Part shown: piece by piece, positions 17,999-35,697 of the stretch
Layout of the letters: each line of letters opens with the position of its first letter
Numbering within the stretch: position 1 is the first letter of the stretch
Source: Prasinococcaceae sp. CCMP 1430
Taxonomy: Eukaryota; Plantae; Prasinodermophyta
DNA: 57,427 nucleotides
NCBI GenBank assembly: GCA_013416795.1
Contig: RQSC01000306.1
Coordinates: 1,324 to 58,750, forward strand
Reading direction: 5' to 3'
Notes under the pieces: model-generated
What the model saw: the letters and a program-made list of their open reading frames with translations, nothing else
What the model was told of the DNA's origin: nothing
Databases searched by the model: none
Program-made: the position numbers and the translations under genes

Positions 17999-19379
17999 CA
18001 CACGAAGGCCGACGCCGCGGCCGGCGGCGCAGCTGGCGAGACGCCGTCGCGCTACTGGCGTTGGCGCGGATTCGACGTGCACTATGAGCTCCACGATGGC
18101 ACGGGGGCCGGCGTGGAAACCCGTGACGGCGCGCCTGATGCCGATGTCGTCTTCGTCGCAGGCTTCGGCTGTGGCACGTTCCACTTCGAGCGCAACCTCG
18201 CGCCGCTCGCCGCAGCCGCAGGATGCCGCACGTTCGCGATGGACATAGCAGGTCAGGGCAAGAGCTGGCCCGTCGAGGTGGCGCCCCTGAATGCGAGTGG
18301 ACACTCCTACGACGCAGAGCTATGGGTCGAGCAGCTCTCGAGCTTCGTCGACGAGGTCGTGCGCGGGGGGCGGAAGGATGGGCTGGCTGAGAGGCGAGTG
18401 TTTCTTGTCGGAAACTCGCTTGGAGGTTACCTCTGTGCCGCGGCTGCCGAGAGGCTCGCACGCGCGAGCGCAGTCGAAGGTGTCGTGCTGCTTAATGCTA
18501 CACCCTTCTGGGGCTCGACGGCGGTGCTGCCGGAGTGGTTGTGGAGAGGGGCGTTGCCCGTGCCGCGTCCGCTGCGTTCTCTCGTGACTTCCTACTGGGA
18601 CTTCTTTCGGAGCGAAGGCAACATCGCGCGCCTGCTCGCGCTGGTGTACGCGCGGCCCGACGTGACGCTCTCGCGGGGTGGGGGCGACGGGAGGGCCGCG
18701 CGGGACAAGGAAGGCGCAGACTACGCGCAGCTGGTCGCAGACATTCGCGCGCCCAGCGAGCACCCCCACGCGCTTGACGCCTTCTGCTCCATTCTGCTCT
18801 CGCCAGCGCTGGCGGCGCCACCGGGCGCGGGTAAGCTCACGGGAGCGTTCGACGCGGCGCTCGCGTCGTTGTCATCTTCCGGAGTCAAGGTCGTACTTTT
18901 GAACGGAGAGGAAGACCCTTGGGTTGTGCCCGCCTGGGGCCGGCGCGCCAAGCGTATGGTGCCGGGGGCGACGCTGGTGGAGATCAGCCCCGCGGGGCAC
19001 TGCCCGCATCATGAGGTGCGCACGAATGGCGCGCACGCGCATGCGTGCCGACCCTCGCGCCCCATTTGCGTGTGTGCAAAGTGCGTGACGCAGATGTGCG
19101 TGTCGAGCGCGCTCGCGCGTGCATCGTCACGCGCTAGCTGACAGCTGCATGCAGGCGCCCGCCCTGACCAACGAGCTCCTGCGGTGTCTGGTGACGAGCG
19201 GAGGAGTTGATACGCCCGCGGCACTCGCCGCTGCCGAGGCCGCGTCACGTGCGGAGGCTGCTGACCCGCGCGCAGCGCGCGTGGCCGTCCGCGCGCGCGC
19301 TGTGCGCGACGGCTCGCCGCAAACATTGCTTGGCAAGGTTGTCGCTGCGGCGGAGGAGCGAGGATGGGCGCAATTGTGA
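17999..19379 (+). CDS. PPH: Pheophytinase-like alpha/beta hydrolase; 5' exon(s) lie upstream of element B
   Basis: YWRWRGFDVHYE, VVFVAGFGCGTFHFE, DIAGQGKS, VFLVGNSLGGY (nucleophile Ser), LLNATPFWG, GEEDPWV, ISPAGHCPHHE|APALTNELL; intron 19017-19153. Confidence 0.85.
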
Positions 19380-19427
19380 TGGCGGGCGAGCATTCTGTCT
19401 TGTAAGATGCGGTGTACAATACTCACT

Positions 19428-20826
19428 CTAGGGCAAGGCCATCACAACGGCCTTCGCCTCAGCCGCGGCCGCCTTCGCATCGGCGGCCTTGGCCTCTGCC
19501 TTGGACGCAGCCTCGGCTTCGGCCTTGGCGATGGTGGCCGCCTCAGCAGCGGCCTCGGCCTCGGCAGCAGCCTCGGCATCGGCCTTGGCAGCGGCCTCGC
19601 GTTCGGCGTTGGCAGCGGTCTCGGCAGCAGCAGCGGCGGCAGCGGCGGTCTCGGCAGTGGTAGCGGCCTCCGCCGCAGCCTCGGTCTCGGCCTTGGACCC
19701 AACCAAGGTGGGCTGCACGTATCGCGCGCGCGTGTCAGCGCTGGTGGGATGCGCATCAAAGAGGCGCCAGTGTGCGTGTCAAGCGGGTGGCGGTGCGCAA
19801 GCCCGACCGACTGCTCGAGCTTGCGTGCACGAGGCGCTCTCGCGCCGGCGTACCTCGCCGTCGATGAACTCGTAAGTCACGTAGCCCATGCTATCGCCCG
19901 CCTTGGCAGCCGCCTCGGCGGCGGCGGCGGCGGCAGCAGCCACAGCTTCGGTTTGCGCTTTGACTGCGGCCTCGGCCTCGGCTTTGGAGACAGCCTCAGC
20001 AACAGCCTTGGCGGCAGCCTCGGCAGCAGCCTTCGTTGCCGAAGCAGCCTCGGCCTTGGCAGACGACGCTGCCTCAGCGGCGGTCGCCTTCGCAATAGCG
20101 GCTTCGGCCTCCGCAATTGCGGCAGCCTCGGCCTCGGTCGCAGCCTTGGCTTTCGCCTCCGCCTCGGCCTTCGCCTTCGCCTCAGCCTCGGCCTTGGCCT
20201 TCGCCTCGGCCTCGGCCTTCGCCTTCGCCTCAGCCTCGGCCTTCGCCTTCGCCTCGGCCTCGGCCTTGGCCTTCGCCTCCGCCTCGGCCTTCGCCTTCGC
20301 CTCCGCCTCGGCCTTTGCCTTCGCCTCCGCCTCGGCCTTCGCCTTCGCCTCGGCCTCGGCCTTCGCCTTCGCCTCGGCCTCGGCCTTCGCCTTCGCCTCC
20401 GCCTCGGCCTTCGCCTTCGCCTCCGCCTCGGCCTTCGCCTTCGCCTCAGCCTCCGCCTTGGCCTTCGCCTCAGCCTCCGCCTTGGCCTTCGCCTCCGCCT
20501 CGGCCTTCGCCTCGGCCTCGACCTTGGCGAGGGCCTGGGCCTTCGCCTGGGCGGCAGCCGCGGCCTCGGCCATGAAGACCTTCAGAACCTCTGGATTGGT
20601 GGCAGGAGCGGCCTCGGCCTCGGCTTCGACCTTGGCGAGGGCTTGGGCCTTCGCCTGGGCGGCGGCCGCGGCCTCGGCCATGAAGACCTTCAGAACCTCT
20701 GGATTGGTGGCAGGAGCGGCCTCGCCCTTGGCATCGGCGTTCGCGAGGGCCTGGGCATTGGCCTGAGCGGCCGCCGCGGCTTCGGCCTTGAAGACCTTCA
20801 GGACTTCTGGGTTGATGGCAGCAGCC
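19428..20826 (-). CDS. Ala/Glu/Lys repeat protein (3 x 36-aa repeat, then 15 x AEAEAKAK); intron 19713-19853; start not identified
   Basis: Open frame with synonymous third-position variation that preserves the octamer; GTACGC..GCAG intron joins [11 protein letters not shown]|PTLVGSK; stop at 19428. Confidence 0.7.
20143..20502 (-). repeat. 15 tandem 24-bp units encoding AEAEAKAK
   Basis: Counted unit by unit (plus strand GCCTTN GCCTTC GCCTCN GCCTCS). Confidence 0.95.
20521..20826 (-). repeat. Three 108-bp coding repeats (NPEVLKVF(M/K)AEAAAAAQA..)
   Basis: TTCAG(A/G)AC anchor at 20581, 20689, 20797 (108-bp spacing). Confidence 0.9.
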
Positions 20827-20964
20827 TTTGTGTCGGTCGCCCGCACGGCATCCGCGCGTGTCAGCAGCGCGCCGGTGCTGGCCTTGCCGAGGCGCAAGCT
20901 GCGCGCACCGAGCACCGCGGTGGGCGGGCGCGCGGGGCGGACGCGCTCCGCCGCGCAGGTGGCG

Positions 20965-22293
20965 ATGCACTTCAAGCGCGTGGAAGCAAGCCTGGATGTG
21001 TCGCTCCACCCTGCAGAGCTCAAAGATGCCTCCGCAGCGGTGGCGGGCAAGCTGGACGGCCTGCTGATGCGCTACAAGCCGCAGCTAGGAGGTGTGGTGC
21101 TCGCGTACTCCGGCGCCAAGGCGGCCGTACGCGACGCGCCTGCGGTGCTGCCGTACGTGCCGCACGTCGTGCTCGACGTGAGCGCGACACTCACAGTATT
21201 TTCGCCGCGCGTAGGGGAGTGCGTGCATGGGGTAGTGACCGCGGTTGGCAGCGAGCTCATCTCGCTGCTGGTGAGTGGCATCAAGGCGGTCGTGCGCGCC
21301 GACGAGCTCCGCGCCATCTCTGCGGACGACCAGGCTGGCGGGGACAAGTGGAGCTACGACCCCGCACGTCGTGTGTGGCACTGCGCATCGGATGGCGAGC
21401 GCTCGATCTGCGAGGGCTGCGAGGTCCGCTTCGTGGTGAGGGGCATTCAGGACCTGCGTGACGACCTGCTAGAGGAAGTTGAGGTGCTCGGTGCTCTGCG
21501 GCACTCCGAGGAAAGCCTGGACGCGGACGCGGCGCTCGGACGGGTAGGCGGCGCGCATGCGCGCGATGCCCCCAAGTGCGCGCCGACCACGCCGCTTGCG
21601 TCGCTCGCGACGCGAGGCATCGCCGCCAAGTCGCCCCTCATGTCGCCGGGAGACACGGGCGGCGGTAGTGCGAACGTCGCCCGCAAGCGCGTGAGCTTCG
21701 CGGCCCTGCCACCTGGCGGTGTGTCGATGCCCAACGGCGTGGCCAAAATCACGCCACTGCGCAGCAGCAGCGGCGGCGGTGGCGGCGGCAGCACTTTTGG
21801 AAAGCCTCAGGGGTCGGGTGGTGACGCCAGCGATGGCGACGGCGGCGGGAAGAAACGCAAGCGCAGTGGCAGCGAGGGCAGCGACGGCGGCGAGCAGAAC
21901 GGAGGCGCGGGCGGTGCGGGCGGCGACGGCGGCGAGGGCACGCCCGGAACCTCGAATGCGGAGAAACAGAAGAGCAAAAAGAAGAAGTACAAGGACAAGA
22001 AAAAGCGCAAGGCGAGGGAGCGAAAGGAGGGTGGCGGGGCCGGCGGCGGCGAAACGCCCGCCACGCCCGCCACGCCCGCTGCGGCCGCCAACGGCTCCGC
22101 CGCCGCGGCCAACGGCTCCGCGGCGGGACAAACGCCAGAGGAGATGCGCCGCAAGATGATTGAGGCGCTACAGAGCCAGATCGACAGCCTCAAGGCGCAG
22201 ACGACGCCCACGAGCGCAACGCCGGGCAAGTCGGGCGGAAAGAAGAAGAAGAAGAAGAAGAAGTACAAGGGCGGCAAAGGGGCGGGCAAGTAG
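20965..22293 (+). CDS. RPA43: RNA polymerase I subunit RPA43 (Rpb7-like) with a Lys-rich low-complexity tail
   Basis: MHFKRVEASLDVSLHPAEL..LLMRYKPQLGGVVLAYS..LTVFSPRVGECVHGVVTAVGSELISLLVSG; poly-Lys NLS-like tail. Confidence 0.78.
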   Translation: MHFKRVEASLDVSLHPAELKDASAAVAGKLDGLLMRYKPQLGGVVLAYSGAKAAVRDAPAVLPYVPHVVLDVSATLTVFSPRVGECVHGVVTAVGSELISLLVSGIKAVVRADELRAISADDQAGGDKWSYDPARRVWHCASDGERSICEGCEVRFVVRGIQDLRDDLLEEVEVLGALRHSEESLDADAALGRVGGAHARDAPKCAPTTPLASLATRGIAAKSPLMSPGDTGGGSANVARKRVSFAALPPGGVSMPNGVAKITPLRSSSGGGGGGSTFGKPQGSGGDASDGDGGGKKRKRSGSEGSDGGEQNGGAGGAGGDGGEGTPGTSNAEKQKSKKKKYKDKKKRKARERKEGGGAGGGETPATPATPAAAANGSAAAANGSAAGQTPEEMRRKMIEALQSQIDSLKAQTTPTSATPGKSGGKKKKKKKKYKGGKGAGK

Positions 22294-30026: not shown

Positions 30027-33000
30027 TCACACGAAGATCATATTGTTTTCGTTGCCTGAGTTGTCGTGTCGCGTGTCTTTGCTCCGGTCTGAGAGTGAGG
30101 AGGGGAAGACGGTGGGAGAAAGGGGTGGGGTAGGGTGGGGGTGGGGTGGGGGGTGGGGGAGGCGTGCGAGCGCGCTGCGGTGTTAGCGGCCGGAGGCATG
30201 CAGGGTGGGGAGCTCGCGCACGCCGTTCGCTCTTGCGTGTGGGCGGGCGAGGTGCGCTTCCCACGTGAGCGGTCAGCAGGACAATCTCACACGGGGCGCG
30301 CGCACGCACCCGTGATCCAGACGTCATCGACGACGAGCTTGTACATGTACTCGCCGGCAGGAAGTTTGAGCTTTGCTGTGAACGTCGCACAGCGTTGGTC
30401 ATCGTACTCGCTAGTGCGCGTCATCTCCAACCGGCCCTCCCACTCGTCAAAAGAGCCCGCCAGCTCGACATTCTTCGCCTCGCCGTGCCAGTCCACTGGT
30501 TTTGCGCATGCGAGCGCGCACGCGACGACGCTCGTGGCAGCGTGTCAGCGCGGGCCGCAGGGGCGCTCGCACGCAAGCGCTTCGCTCGCGCGTCCCTCGC
30601 GCGCGCTTGCGGCGTACCTATCACTGTTGTGAGCGCACTTTGATCGCCGTCACCCGAGTCGAAGACCACAGCCTCGATGCCGTCAAGAACCGCCGCCGCC
30701 GCAGCAGCTGCTGCCGCGGCCGCGGCCTCGGCCTCGGCCGCCTCCGCCGCGGCCCGAGCCTCAGCCTCGGCAGCTTCCTGAGCGGCTCGGGCCTCAGCCA
30801 GAGCGGCCAGGGCCTGAGCCTCGGCAGCTTCCTGAGCAGCCAGGGCCTCAGCCTCGGCGGCCTCCTGAGCGGCTCTCGCAGCAGCAGCAGCAACAGCGAT
30901 AGCCTCCGCCTCCGCCGCAGCCTTCTCAGCTTCCATCTCTGCGGCAGCGGCAGCGCTCTCACACTCGGCTATAGCCCTGGCATCGGCCTCCGCCTGGGCA
31001 GCGGCAGCGGCAGCGGCCTTGGCCTTCACCTTGGCCTTCGCGTAGGCCCGGGCCTCGGCCTCGGCCTTGTGCTTGGGGCCGTCCTCGACCTCGGTCGCCG
31101 CCCTGGCCTTGGCAGCCGTCTCGGCAGCAACAGCGGCAGCCACGACGGCCTCGGCTTTTAGCTTGGCCCTGGTAGCGGCGTCAGCGTCGGCCTTGGCCGC
31201 TGCCTTGAATGCTGCGTTTGCCTCGGCTTCGGTGGCATAGACGACGCCTCCGTTTGCCTCGGCCCAGACGTTGGTTTTGGCCACCTCCGCGGCGGTGGCC
31301 ACCTCATCGACCACTTCAACAGGGACGGCCGGCGCGGAAGGGGGGAAGGCGGCGCGCGAGGAGTCCCCCACAGCGTCGGCCCGGCCATAGGCGTCTGCGT
31401 TGGCTCTAGCCATGGCCTCGGCCTCGGCCTCGGCCTTGGCTGCCGCCACCTTTGCGGCGACGATGTCAACGTCGGACAAGCCCTGGACCCCGGACATCAT
31501 ATCTCGCTTTGTCTTGGCAGCAGCCTGCTGGGGTGTGAGTTTCCTCAAATCGAGCTGTGCGGCTTCCTCGGCTTTCGCCTTCAGCTGTGCGGCTTCCTTT
31601 TGCTCGGCCTTGGCCTTGGCCATGTTGGCCTTGGCTGCAGCCTTCGCTTCCGCCACCAAGGCCTCGGCCTTTGCCTTCGCATCAGCCTCGATCTTCGCCT
31701 GGTGCTCGGCTTCAATCTCGGCCTCGATCTCCTCCTCGGTCATCAGCGCGCGTCTCGCCTTCTTCTCAGCCTCGGCCTTCGCCTTCGCCTTCGCCTCAGC
31801 CTTTGCCTTTGCCTTCGCCTCAGCCTTTGCCTTCGCCTTCGCCTCGGCCTCGGCCTTTGCCCTCGCCTCAGCCTCGGCCTTCTCCTTCTCCTTTCGCTCG
31901 GCCTCCGCCTTCGCCTCAGCCTCGGCCTTCGCCTTTGCCTCGGCCTTCGCCTTTGCCTCGGCCTTCGCCTCGGCCTTCGCCTTCTGCTCAGCCTCAGCCT
32001 TCGCCTTCTGCTCAGCCTCGGCCTTCGTCTTTGCCTCGGCCGCGGCCTTTTCCTTCTCCTTCTGCTCAGTCTCGGCCTTCGCCTTCGCCTCGGCCTCGGC
32101 CGCCGCCTTCTGCTCAGCCTCGGCCCCCGCCTTCGCCTCGGCCTCGGCCTTCTCTGTCTTCTCAGCCTCCGCCTCAGCCAAGGCGTTGGTCTGTGCCACC
32201 TCTGCGGCGGTTGCCATCGCATCGACAACCTCAACGGGAACAGCCAGCGCGGGGCGGGGAACGGTGGCGCGCGGGGACTCGCCCGCAGTCTCGGCTCTGG
32301 CCTTGGCTTCCGCCTCGGCCTTGGCCTCGGCCTTGGCTGCCGCAACCTTCGCGGCGACGACATCAACGACGTCCTTCGTCTTCGCCTCGGGCTGGCCCAA
32401 GTCCTCCTGCTCAGCCTCGGCCTTCGCCTTTGCATCGGCCTCGGCCTTCGCCTTTGCATCGGCCTCGGCCTTCGCCTTTGCATCGGCCTCGGCCTTCGCC
32501 TTTGCATCGGCCTCGGCCTTCGCCTTTGCATCGGCCTCGGCCTTCGCCTTTGCATCGGCCTCGGCCTTCGCCTTTGCCTCGGCCTCGGCCTCGGCCTTCG
32601 CCTCGGCCTCGGCCTTCGCCTTCGACTCGGCTTCGGCCGCCGCCTTTGCCTCGGCCTCGGCTTCGGCCGCCGCCTTGTGCTCAGCCTCTGCCTTCGCCTC
32701 TGCCTCTGCCTCTGCCTTGGCCTTCGCCTCTGCCTTGGCCTCGGCCTCGGCCTTGGCCTTCTCCTTTGCCTCGGCCTCCGCCTTTGCCTTCTGCTCGGCC
32801 TCAGCCTTTGCTTTCGCTTCTGCCTCTGCCTTCTCCTTGGCCTTGGCCTCCACCTTTGCCTTCTGCTCGGCCTCGGCCTTTGCCTTCTGCTCGGCCTCGG
32901 CCTTCGCCTTGGCCTCGGCCTTCTCTTTCTGCTCAATCTCGGCCTTTGCCTTCGCCTCGGCTTCGGCCTTTGCCTTCGCCTCGGCCTCGGCCTCCGTAGC

Positions 33001-33465
33001 TGCAGCCGCAGCAGCGACCGTGGCGTTGAACTTCGCGGCGGTTTTGGCCTCTTTCTTAGCGGCCTTGACTTGGGCCTTGGCGACAGCCTCGACCTCGTCA
33101 GCCGTCGTGTCCTTTGAAGTGCCATGATTCGCGTCACGCCTCGCGCGTCAGCGGCGCAGGCACGAGCAGCGGCGCGGCGCCGGCGTGCGGGACGCATGCG
33201 GCGCAGGGGCGCGCAAGACGGGCGCACCGGGTGGGGCGCGCGCTTCGCCCTCGCGCCGGCGCACCTCCTTGTCGGGAAATTCGTACGTCACGAAGCCCCT
33301 ACTGTCCCTCGCGGCCTTCTCCTTGGCCTTCCGCTCCTTTGCCTTCTGGCGCCCGGGCACTCGGTGGCGCGCGGCTGTCTGCGCGCGGCGCGTGCGCGCT
33401 GCGCTGGAGCCGACGAACGCGCGCGCGCTGCGCGCAGCGCCGCCTGCGACCGCCGAGCTCGCCAT
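30027..33465 (-). CDS. About 980-aa protein: transit-peptide-like N-terminus, ~830-aa Ala/Glu/Lys repeat region, C-terminal CBM48 starch-binding module; 4 exons (33465-33265, 33111-30618, 30495-30310, 30088-30027)
   Basis: Exon lengths sum to 2943 nt (981 codons); CBM48 [60 protein letters not shown]; all introns GT-AG. Confidence 0.82.
32420..32576 (-). repeat. Six identical 24-bp units encoding AEADAKAK
   Basis: TGCATC anchor at 32431, 32455, 32479, 32503, 32527, 32551. Confidence 0.92.
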
Positions 33466-34493: not shown

Positions 34494-35697
34494 ATGCTGA
34501 TGCGCCCGCGGCCGGGCGCGGTCGCGAAAAGGAGCGGGGGCGGCCCGAAAGCGGATTCCGCGCTGGGTTCGGAGGCGCGCGGGCGCCGCGCGCCGGCGGG
34601 CGCNGCGCCGCAGGCCACGGGTGGAAAGAAGAAGCGAAAACCGCTGTCGACGAAGAAAAAGAAGAAGAAAGGCACCATGGGGACAGGCATGGCCACGAGT
34701 GCGCCGACGACCGGTGCCATCGAGCGCACGGAGCTCGAGTCGGTCATCGCCGCACTCGAAGAGGATTACCACGCGGAGCAGGCGCGCTACGTAGAGGCAG
34801 TGGAAGCGGCGGGCGGTGCGAGGCCGCGGCGCGCGGCGGTGCGGTGCGCGAACGGGGGCGACGCGGCGTATGGGAGCGGTGAGGCCACCAGCAGCATGAC
34901 GCGTGTGAACGAGAGTCTCGCCGCGCGGGAGACGGAGCTGCTTGCGCTCCAGGAGGAAATCCGCGCCGCGAGCAACGACCTCAAGGAGATGCGCGAGGGG
35001 CTGCAGGAGCAGGTCGGCGCCGCGAGGCGTCAGCTCGACGCACGGAAAGCCCAGATCGAGGCAGCCGAGGCCCACCTCGAGAGCCTCACGCCCGTCCTAG
35101 GTGAGCGCGGCGGCGCGACGGGCGGCGCGGCCGCGAGAGGCGGCCCGCGACGCGGCCGCGCGAGATCGCCGAGGCGCATGCTGCAGCGCGGGAGCACGCA
35201 TCTGACCCGCCGTCGCCCCCTCACCGCTTGCGCGCGCTGCGTGCCGGGCGCGCATCCGCGCTGCTTCGCTCGCGGACCTGCGCAGTGGAATGGAGCGGTC
35301 GCGCCCATCATGTTGAGATCTCCGGCTCTTTCGATGGCTGGACGTCGATGGTGCCGCTTGAGCGGCAAAGCGAGTTCGATTCCGAGGGCTCGGCGGAATT
35401 TTCGGTCGTGATGAGGCTCTACCCCGGCTCGTACGAGTACAAATTCGTCGTGGATGGCAATTGGCTGGCAGGTGCGTGTGCGCGCTCGACGTCTCCGCCG
35501 AGAGGTGCATTCGCGCGCGAGCGAGGAGACTAGAGGGCGCCATGAGCGAGTGCGTGTGCGAGTGCGCTGACGAGGAGATGCCGGCGCTCGCTCTCGCGCC
35601 CGCCCGCGCAGATCCCAACCAGGAAATGACGGCCAAGTCGGGCAACGTGAACAACATACTACGAGTAGTCGCGCCCGTGTCAGGACCAGCTCTTTGA
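34494..35697 (+). CDS. PTST2: PTST2/PTST3 (FLO6)-like coiled-coil + CBM48 starch granule protein; introns 35101-35285, 35472-35611; start at 34494 or 34677
   Basis: Coiled coil NESLAARETELLALQEEI..KAQIEAAEAHLESL followed by V-EWSGRAHHVEISGSFDGW..LYPGSYEYKFVVDGNWLA-D-PNQ..NNILRV, matching the PTST2/3 pattern LYPGxYExKFxVDGxW..DP. Confidence 0.72.

What the first reader, a model, noticed from the sequence alone, without database searches (positions are those of the whole stretch)
20143..20502. Fifteen perfect natural copies of the EAK16 self-assembling octamer AEAEAKAK
Seen: 15 consecutive 24-bp units all encode AEAEAKAK while third positions vary, implying selection on the peptide rather than pure DNA slippage. 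Established: [16 protein letters not shown] is the ionic self-complementary EAK16-II peptide from yeast zuotin, which forms beta-sheet nanofibres/hydrogels; similar A/E/K tracts (e.g. TolA domain II) instead form long single helices. Inference: a 120-aa perfect tract could be a natural hydrogel/amyloid-like or stiff single-helix spacer.
Basis: partly seen in the sequence, partly recalled or inferred. Interest (0 to 1): 0.78.

Follow-up and report, generated by a model that had tools for sequence, protein, structure and literature searches.

The report
Natural AEAEAKAK helix spacer in alga
A marine green alga really does encode and transcribe 15 perfect AEAEAKAK units, but the same perfect polymer serves as a linker in many unrelated bacterial proteins, so it is most likely an ordinary stiff helical spacer and not a natural hydrogel.

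Summary
All 6 distinct DNA variants are silent (P about 1e-4 under neutrality).

The minus strand is transcribed. A GT..AG intron (19713-19853) is spliced out in RNA contigs of three runs from two studies, and is present in a DNA-like run.

The tract is not unique.
- Among the top 120 protein-database hits, 53 carry at least 5 perfect units and 9 carry at least 15 (maximum 28). Most are bacterial FtsY.
- A DNA scan found at least 5 perfect units in 108 loci of prokaryotic species genomes. Carriers include IF-2, FtsY and unrelated enzymes.
- Where the carrier has recognisable domains, the tract lies between or beside them (FtsY, IF-2), like a linker.

In a helix every charged residue has an opposite charge at i+4 and no hydrophobic face exists. 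AlphaFold2 predicts helix.

Best reading: an 18 nm salt-bridged helical spacer in an orphan Ala/Glu/Lys-rich protein, probably of Prasinoderma coloniale. A paralogue in the window ends in a CBM48 starch-binding module. The fibre or hydrogel idea has no support.

The gene's 5' end is unresolved. The scan noted this same stretch before, not on other DNA.

The parts
20145..20504 (-). 15 perfect AEAEAKAK units (120 aa; 30 Glu, 30 Lys, 60 Ala)
   Evidence: Translation and unit table; TRF period 24, score 617; variation is synonymous only.
20505..20828 (-). Three 36-aa (108-nt) repeats with the core NPEVLKVF(M/K)AEAAAAAQA, directly upstream of the tract. Copies 2 and 3 differ at 5 nt and 1 aa. Copy 1 differs at 21-22 nt, 13 of them third positions.
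   Evidence: TRF period 108, 3.0 copies, 88%; pairwise counts. No relatives found by word search, metagenome scan or exhaustive HMMER.
19896..20144 (-). Irregular Ala/Glu-rich continuation after the tract, predicted helical
   Evidence: Translation; AlphaFold2 helix 135-265 of the 276-aa construct.
19854..19895 (-). Motif [14 protein letters not shown] at the end of the large exon. It is shared, together with the first ~15 nt of the following intron, with the second EAK gene at 33264-33305.
   Evidence: Six-frame motif scan and donor scan; DNA alignment A1.
19713..19853 (-). Intron, 141 nt, GT..AG on the minus strand, phase 0
   Evidence: Joint 19712/19854 in RNA contigs of X1, X2 and X3 (two studies). 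It is unspliced in the DNA-like run X17, whose contig spans 19200-20181.
19428..19712 (-). Last exon, 94 aa, Ala/Glu-rich tail, with the stop codon at 19428-19430. Transcript contigs end at 19399-19441.
   Evidence: Translation; contig pieces (table 8).
20829..20919 (-). Unresolved 5' region. There is no in-frame ATG between 21050 and 20681. It holds a candidate intron 3' end: a GCTGACACGCGCG branch-like motif and an AG at 20827-20826. RNA and DNA contigs depart from the window here.
   Evidence: ATG list; sequence. X3's RNA contig matches 20695-20828 and then runs on unlike. X17's DNA contig is unlike the window left of 20920.
20920..22293 (+). Divergent neighbour gene (ATG at 20965; transcript contigs start at 20920-20939). 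It limits the space for the EAK gene's promoter and first exon.
   Evidence: ORF list; contig pieces X1 record 7 and X2 record 22; no Pfam family.

Best explanation
The tract is part of a real, spliced, expressed, lineage-specific protein made almost only of Ala, Glu and Lys. The genome is GC-rich, marine and green-alga-like, probably Prasinoderma coloniale. The 120 residues most likely form one long alpha-helix of about 18 nm. It would be stabilised by the high helix propensity of alanine and by an unbroken ladder of Glu-Lys salt bridges at i to i+4, and it has no hydrophobic face. It would therefore work as a stiff, soluble spacer or tether that sets a distance between the N-terminal 36-aa repeats and the C-terminal motif and tail.

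Shown:
- the sequence and the synonymous-only variation;
- the splicing and the strand;
- the salt-bridge geometry;
- convergent use of the identical polymer in many unrelated proteins, at linker positions where the carrier's domains are recognisable.

Inferred:
- the helical state in vivo;
- the spacer role;
- any link to plastid starch, which is suggested only by a paralogue that ends in a CBM48 module.
For: - Sequence: 15 perfect units, and all 6 distinct DNA variants are silent, P = 1.2e-4.
- Transcription: the GT..AG intron on the minus strand is removed in RNA contigs of 3 runs from 2 studies and kept in a DNA-like run.
- Geometry: 58 of 58 i to i+4 charged pairs are of opposite sign. 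The hydrophobic moment is 0.011 at 100 degrees.
- Fold: the AlphaFold2 single-sequence model is all helix, mean pLDDT 75.7.
- Identical tracts elsewhere: 53 of the top 120 database hits have at least 5 perfect units, 9 have at least 15, and the maximum is 28.
- Position in FtsY: the tract lies between the N-terminal MGFLDKLFGKKK segment (by my knowledge of FtsY the membrane-targeting helix; not tested here) and the NG domain.
- Other carriers: a protein its source names TolA, and a rhodanese protein.
- Prokaryotic genomes: 108 loci carry at least 5 perfect units. In IF-2 the tract precedes the IF2_N and GTPase domains. Other carriers are a cytochrome c peroxidase, an alpha-amylase and a PKD-domain protein. 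Nearly all of these tracts also show several synonymous DNA versions.
- Zuotin: its middle domain, the source region of EAK16 by my memory of the residue numbers, is a long rigid helix by DEER (PMC8060413).
Against: - Short synthetic EAK16-II peptides form very stable beta-sheets in vitro (literature). The tract is maximally amphipathic as a flat strand, with a moment of 0.87 at 180 degrees.
- At 50% alanine it is less charged than canonical ER/K single helices.
- The AlphaFold2 model used no alignment, has pTM 0.28, and breaks the helix inside the perfect repeat (residues 130-134). Its details are therefore unreliable.
- No recognised domains flank the tract in the alga, so what it would space apart is unknown.
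- The start of the protein is unresolved.
Confidence: 0.6

Rival explanations
1. Helical but self-associating scaffold. The EAK helices pair, as an antiparallel hairpin or in bundles. Together with the CBM48-bearing paralogue they would form a tethering network on plastid starch or the pyrenoid sheath, in the manner of PTST, MRC or SAGA-type long-helix starch proteins.
For: - AlphaFold2 folds the tract back on itself at residues 130-134.
- The second EAK gene in the window has a transit-peptide-like N-terminus.
- By GT..AG joins that keep the frame, that gene also has a C-terminal CBM48 (AMPK1_CBM 3.3e-13).
- A coiled-coil plus CBM48 gene lies head-to-head beside it (1.8e-16).
- The two EAK genes share a 14-aa motif and an intron start.
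- PTST proteins are plastidial coiled-coil plus CBM48 adaptors (PMC4339375).
Against: - Gene 1 has no CBM48 and no Pfam family.
- The helix has no hydrophobic seam: period 8 and moment 0.011.
- The hairpin comes from a low-pTM single-sequence model.
- No localisation data exist, the splice joins of gene 2 are not confirmed by RNA, and plastid targeting of gene 1 is unknown.
Confidence: 0.2
2. Tolerated low-complexity expansion. A slippage-prone 24-nt repeat grew inside an orphan gene. It is kept only because an Ala/Glu/Lys helix or coil is harmless, and neither its length nor its exact sequence has a specific role.
For: - The gene is an orphan: there are no relatives of the non-repeat part among 1.84 billion representatives, by word search, or in metagenomes.
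- Both repeat arrays (24 nt and 108 nt) are typical expansion products.
- The same polymer arises again and again in unrelated proteins, which fits an easy mutational origin.
Against: - Purely synonymous variation in 15 units (P = 1.2e-4) shows that changes to the peptide are removed.
- The units are not DNA-identical (9 versions), so the array is not a very recent slippage product.
- Convergent retention at linker positions of FtsY and IF-2 suggests the polymer is useful.
Confidence: 0.15
3. Natural EAK16-like beta-sheet fibre or hydrogel. The alternating Ala/charged pattern stacks into ionic self-complementary sheets and forms a gel or amyloid-like matrix in vivo.
For: - The unit is identical to EAK16-II, whose 16-mer forms stable beta-sheet nanofibres.
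- The strand hydrophobic moment is 0.87.
Against: - Identical tracts of up to 27 units sit in FtsY and IF-2. These are generally essential soluble or membrane-peripheral proteins (my knowledge; not tested for these carriers), so an aggregating 200-aa segment should be strongly selected against.
- Structure prediction gives helix only.
- The flanks are helix-prone Ala/Glu sequence.
- Zuotin's own middle domain is helical.
Confidence: 0.05

Closest known systems
Charged single alpha-helix (SAH, ER/K motif) linkers, e.g. in myosins (PMC4183817, PMC5347031, PMC5812594)
   Same: There is a dense, regular i to i+4 Glu/Lys network and no hydrophobic seam. The helix is predicted to be long and uninterrupted. 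In the bacterial carriers of the identical tract with recognisable domains, it lies between or beside functional domains.
   Different: Half of the residues are alanine, against mostly charged residues in canonical SAHs. The period is a perfect 8 residues, not an irregular or heptad-like one. The monomeric helical state is untested. The flanking domains in the alga are unknown.
Linker regions of bacterial FtsY, IF-2 and TolA that contain perfect (AEAEAKAK)n
   Same: The peptide polymer is identical (7-28 units) and shows the same signature of several synonymous DNA versions.
   Different: There is no homology outside the tract. The algal protein has no GTPase or TolA domain. The similarity is therefore convergence in a low-complexity segment and not common descent.
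EAK16-II synthetic self-assembling peptide, derived from yeast zuotin
   Same: The repeat unit is exactly the same and has the type-II charge pattern (--++).
   Different: The synthetic peptide is a free 16-mer at high concentration. Here the unit is a 120-residue segment embedded in a helix-prone protein. In zuotin the surrounding middle domain is a long rigid helix (PMC8060413); the placement of the EAK segment in that domain is from my memory and was not checked here.
PTST / MRC-type plastid starch proteins (long coiled coil plus CBM48; PMC4339375)
   Same: The paralogous EAK gene in the window appears to combine a transit-like N-terminus, about 900 aa of A/E/K-rich helix and a C-terminal CBM48. 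A coiled-coil plus CBM48 gene lies next to it.
   Different: The gene holding the 15-unit tract has no CBM48. Its helix lacks heptad hydrophobic positions. No sequence homology to PTST outside CBM48 was shown.

Membership tests
EAK16-type ionic self-complementary peptides (functional class) | Strict alternation of a small hydrophobic residue and a charged residue, with the --++ (type II) charge order | tested here: met
   15 of 15 units are AEAEAKAK; strand hydrophobic moment 0.87 at 180 degrees.
EAK16-type ionic self-complementary peptides (functional class) | Forms beta-sheet nanofibres or a hydrogel | not testable with these tools
   This needs CD, ThT or TEM. The only structural prediction gives helix.
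Charged single alpha-helix (SAH / ER/K) | Dense network of opposite charges at i to i+4 (or i+3) | tested here: met
   58 of 58 i to i+4 charged pairs are opposite, and there are no same-sign pairs.
Charged single alpha-helix (SAH / ER/K) | Composition dominated by Glu/Lys/Arg (about three quarters or more) | tested here: not met
   50% Ala, 25% Glu, 25% Lys.
Charged single alpha-helix (SAH / ER/K) | No heptad hydrophobic seam (not a coiled coil) | tested here: met
   Period 8; helical hydrophobic moment 0.011 per residue.
Charged single alpha-helix (SAH / ER/K) | Stable monomeric helix in solution that bridges two domains | not testable with these tools
   AlphaFold2 predicts helix, but the oligomeric state is unknown. 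No Pfam domains flank the tract in the alga. In FtsY and IF-2 the identical tract lies between recognised segments or domains.
PTST-like plastid starch adaptor | C-terminal CBM48 (AMPK1_CBM) starch-binding module | tested here: not met
   No Pfam family in either exon of this gene. The transcript ends just after the stop at 19428. The paralogue at 30290-30544 does have the module.
PTST-like plastid starch adaptor | Plastid transit peptide | tested here: inconclusive
   The in-frame sequence upstream of repeat 1 looks transit-like, but there is no ATG before 20681. The 5' exon is unresolved.
TolA (domain II) | TolA N-terminal anchor and C-terminal domain III (PF06519) | tested here: not met
   Pfam finds only a sub-threshold compositional match to Fibrinogen_BP (18.5 bits against a cutoff of 50).

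The most novel reading that the evidence does not exclude
In the alga the EAK tract may not be an inert rod. It might switch reversibly between helix and EAK16-like sheet, or bundle with the CBM48-bearing EAK paralogue, to build a gel-like matrix or ruler around plastid starch or the pyrenoid. That would make it a natural counterpart of the designer peptide hydrogel.
Probability: 0.05. Interest if true: 0.8.

Novelty: new member of a known kind. Interest (0 to 1): 0.25.

Why it matters
The main value here is corrective. The peptide-materials literature traces EAK16 to one short segment of yeast zuotin, and all 25 top-listed papers that contain the unit concern synthetic peptides. In fact, perfect AEAEAKAK polymers of up to about 225 residues are widespread natural linkers in bacteria, and one occurs in an early-diverging green alga. 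These long natural versions are ready-made test objects for the helix-versus-sheet behaviour of this sequence class. For algal biology, the gene and its CBM48-bearing paralogue are candidates for long tethers at plastid starch, but nothing here shows that. As a genomic feature the tract is an ordinary low-complexity helical spacer in an orphan protein.

Tried and rejected
- Word search with the N-terminal part and the 36-aa repeats: nothing at E <= 1e-3, and the candidate list was probably swamped by Ala-rich words.
- Exhaustive HMMER of the 36-aa repeats against 1.84 billion representatives: one hit at E = 2e-4. It is an ankyrin-repeat protein that shares only the NPEV(I/L)KV motif, so I rejected it as uninformative.
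- Metagenome scans by peptide patterns and by an exact 33-mer from repeat 1: no relatives.
- Pfam: only Fibrinogen_BP far below its cutoff, which is compositional.
- PDB sequence search: only K/A/Q-rich tails of eL29 and similar low-complexity stretches. Zuotin was not retrieved because its segment is too short.
- ESM Atlas: best score 0.79, below the useful range.
- Loose-end sequences of the DNA contigs that depart from the window are not found anywhere in the window, so they do not come from the paralogue here.
- Plus-strand ORFs across the tract (the 684-aa, 292-aa and 152-aa ORFs): rejected as open frames of GC-rich repeat DNA, because the intron is GT..AG on the minus strand only.
- The protein database did not return the window's own product within the 203-646 aa range. 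The public gene model, if there is one, is therefore longer, shorter or absent.
- The spliced protein was never joined. The exons were searched separately by reference, and the joined step was left out.

Full report
**Observation**

The minus-strand ORF 19779-21050 contains exactly 15 consecutive AEAEAKAK units. They are residues 183-302, which is window 20504 down to 20145.

Tandem Repeats Finder gives period 24, 15.3 copies and score 617. The units come in 9 DNA versions. Only 4 of 24 columns vary, and all 4 are third codon positions. There are 17 variant cells and at least 6 distinct events, all silent. Since 16 of the 72 possible single changes are silent, the chance of this under neutrality is 1.2e-4.

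Repeat homogenisation would erase silent and replacement variants alike.

**Strand, splicing and gene model**

Contigs of three RNA runs show the joint 19712/19854. Two are marine metatranscriptomes from one study, and one run is labelled with an organism and comes from another study. The joint removes 141 nt whose ends read GT..AG on the minus strand. A DNA-like run of the same organism label spans the region unspliced.

The intron is phase 0. The large exon ends in [14 protein letters not shown]. The last exon (19712-19428) adds 94 Ala/Glu-rich residues. Transcript contigs end at 19399-19441. There they meet the 3' end of the convergent alpha/beta-hydrolase gene.

Upstream of the tract lie three 36-aa repeats at 20505-20828. 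Their differences are biased to third codon positions, so all three look coding.

**The 5' end is unresolved**

- No in-frame ATG exists between 21050 and 20681, and three out-of-frame ATGs precede 20681.
- The divergent plus-strand gene starts at about 20920, with its ATG at 20965.
- One RNA contig matches 20695-20828 exactly and then continues with sequence unlike the window.
- A 6.7-kb DNA contig of run X17 is unlike the window to the left of 20920.
- 20829-20880 carries a GCTGACACGCGCG motif followed by AG at 20827-20826. This resembles the 3' ends of the confirmed intron and of the paralogue's first intron.

I infer a missing or distant first exon, or a local difference between the assembly and other strains. 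I could not test this.

**Not unique**

A word search with the tract found 1111 proteins at E <= 1e-5 among the 8000 candidates scored. Of the 120 best hits:
- 53 hold at least 5 perfect units in a row;
- 9 hold at least 15, and the maximum is 28 units, or 225 residues.

Most are bacterial FtsY. In these the tract lies between the N-terminal MGFLDKLFGKKK segment and the NG domain. By my knowledge of FtsY, not tested here, that segment is the membrane-targeting helix. Other carriers are a protein its source names TolA, an ADP-ribosyltransferase-like protein, orphans, and a rhodanese protein with a transit-like N-terminus on a metagenome contig.

A degenerate DNA scan for 5 perfect units found 108 loci from many phyla in one-genome-per-species prokaryotic assemblies, with up to 24 units. 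Pfam places the carriers in IF-2, a di-haem cytochrome c peroxidase, an alpha-amylase and a PKD-domain protein, besides orphans. In IF-2 the tract lies before the IF2_N and GTPase domains. Nearly all of these tracts also come in several synonymous DNA versions.

This is convergence on one peptide polymer. In the carriers with recognisable domains it lies between or beside those domains.

**How it most likely works**

Read as a helix, all 58 charged i to i+4 pairs are Glu-Lys or Lys-Glu, and the hydrophobic moment is 0.011. Read as a flat strand, the moment is 0.87. Both the helix and the EAK16 sheet are therefore physically conceivable.

The balance favours a helix for four reasons:
- AlphaFold2, run without an alignment, predicts helices throughout (pLDDT 75.7). 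It places one break inside the repeat, which I do not trust.
- The flanks are helix-prone.
- FtsY and IF-2, generally essential proteins (my knowledge; not tested for these carriers), carry even longer identical tracts.
- The zuotin middle domain is a long rigid helix by DEER (PMC8060413). That the EAK16 segment lies in that domain is from my memory of residue numbers and was not checked.

A 120-residue helix is about 18 nm long. I therefore read the tract as a stiff soluble spacer or tether (confidence 0.6). The rivals are:
- a self-associating helical scaffold (0.2);
- a merely tolerated expansion (0.15);
- a beta fibre or gel (0.05).

**Context**

The window has 67.9% GC. Another agent's note names the genome Prasinoderma coloniale. 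This fits that genome's published 69.8% GC and marine habitat (PMC7455551) and the marine metatranscriptome hits. I did not verify the organism independently.

A second EAK-rich gene lies at about 30290-33465 on the minus strand. It has:
- a transit-peptide-like N-terminus;
- the related motif [14 protein letters not shown], followed by a near-identical intron start;
- about 900 aa of imperfect EAK repeats;
- a CBM48 module reached through a frame-preserving GT..AG join (AMPK1_CBM 3.3e-13).

A coiled-coil plus CBM48 gene lies head-to-head beside it. This recalls PTST-type starch adaptors (PMC4339375). However, the gene holding the 15-unit tract has no CBM48, and none of the paralogue's joins has RNA support here.

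**Relatives and novelty**

Outside the tract the protein is an orphan. The kind of element, an Ala/Glu/Lys salt-bridged helical linker, is known. The exact polymer is common in sequence databases, although the papers that contain the unit deal with synthetic peptides. I class this as a new member of a known kind, with interest 0.25.

The spliced model was searched exon by exon by reference, and the joined protein was not submitted anywhere. The scan had noted this same stretch before (s1-403893), not on other DNA.

Noticed in passing
window 30290-33465, minus strand: A second, much larger EAK-rich gene. It has a transit-like N-terminus with the motif [14 protein letters not shown] (exon 1, 33465-33264) and about 900 aa of imperfect AEAEAKAK / AEADAKAK repeats. 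A donor ATAG|GTACGCC near 30616 and an acceptor near 30497 then join in frame to a CBM48 exon (AMPK1_CBM 3.3e-13). This is a PTST-like architecture inferred from sequence only.
   Followed up: partly
window 34677-35530, plus strand: A coiled-coil ORF followed in another frame by a CBM48 module (AMPK1_CBM 1.8e-16), head-to-head with the large EAK gene. It is a likely PTST homologue.
   Followed up: partly
window 19838-19895 and 33249-33305, minus strand: A block of about 60 nt is shared by the two EAK genes. It covers the end of an exon (motif G[FY]VTYEF.D.E) and the first ~15 nt of the intron (GT[AG]CGCCGGCGCGAG). In gene 1 the block lies near the C-terminus, and in gene 2 just after the transit-like peptide.
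   Followed up: partly
window 20695-20920: Independent data depart from the window here. A DNA contig of run X17 (6.7 kb) is unlike the window to the left of 20920. Neither X17 nor X1 covers 20754-20901. One metatranscriptome contig matches up to 20828 and then diverges. This could be a strain difference, an insertion or a local assembly problem at the 5' end of the EAK gene.
   Followed up: partly
window 19399-19441: Transcript contigs of the plus-strand alpha/beta-hydrolase gene (ORF 18077-19141) and of the minus-strand EAK gene end within about 30 nt of each other. The convergent 3' ends are very tightly packed.
   Followed up: no
P0003, P0002, L033, L047 (bacterial FtsY); L008, L079, L058, L055 (IF-2): Gut Clostridia / Oscillospiraceae FtsY and IF-2 carry 10-27 perfect AEAEAKAK units in their linker regions. 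These are much longer than the 16-residue zuotin segment cited as the natural source of EAK16.
   Followed up: partly
L109:3001-4368 (protein P0115): An intron-less metagenome gene encodes a rhodanese-domain protein with a transit-peptide-like N-terminus and at least 10 perfect AEAEAKAK units at its C-terminus. It may come from another picoeukaryote.
   Followed up: no
window 20965-22293, plus strand: The divergent neighbour gene is expressed and has a Lys-rich, Gly-rich C-terminal tail. It has no Pfam family at E <= 0.01. Its N-terminal part reminded me of RNA polymerase I subunit RPA43, but this was not tested.
   Followed up: no
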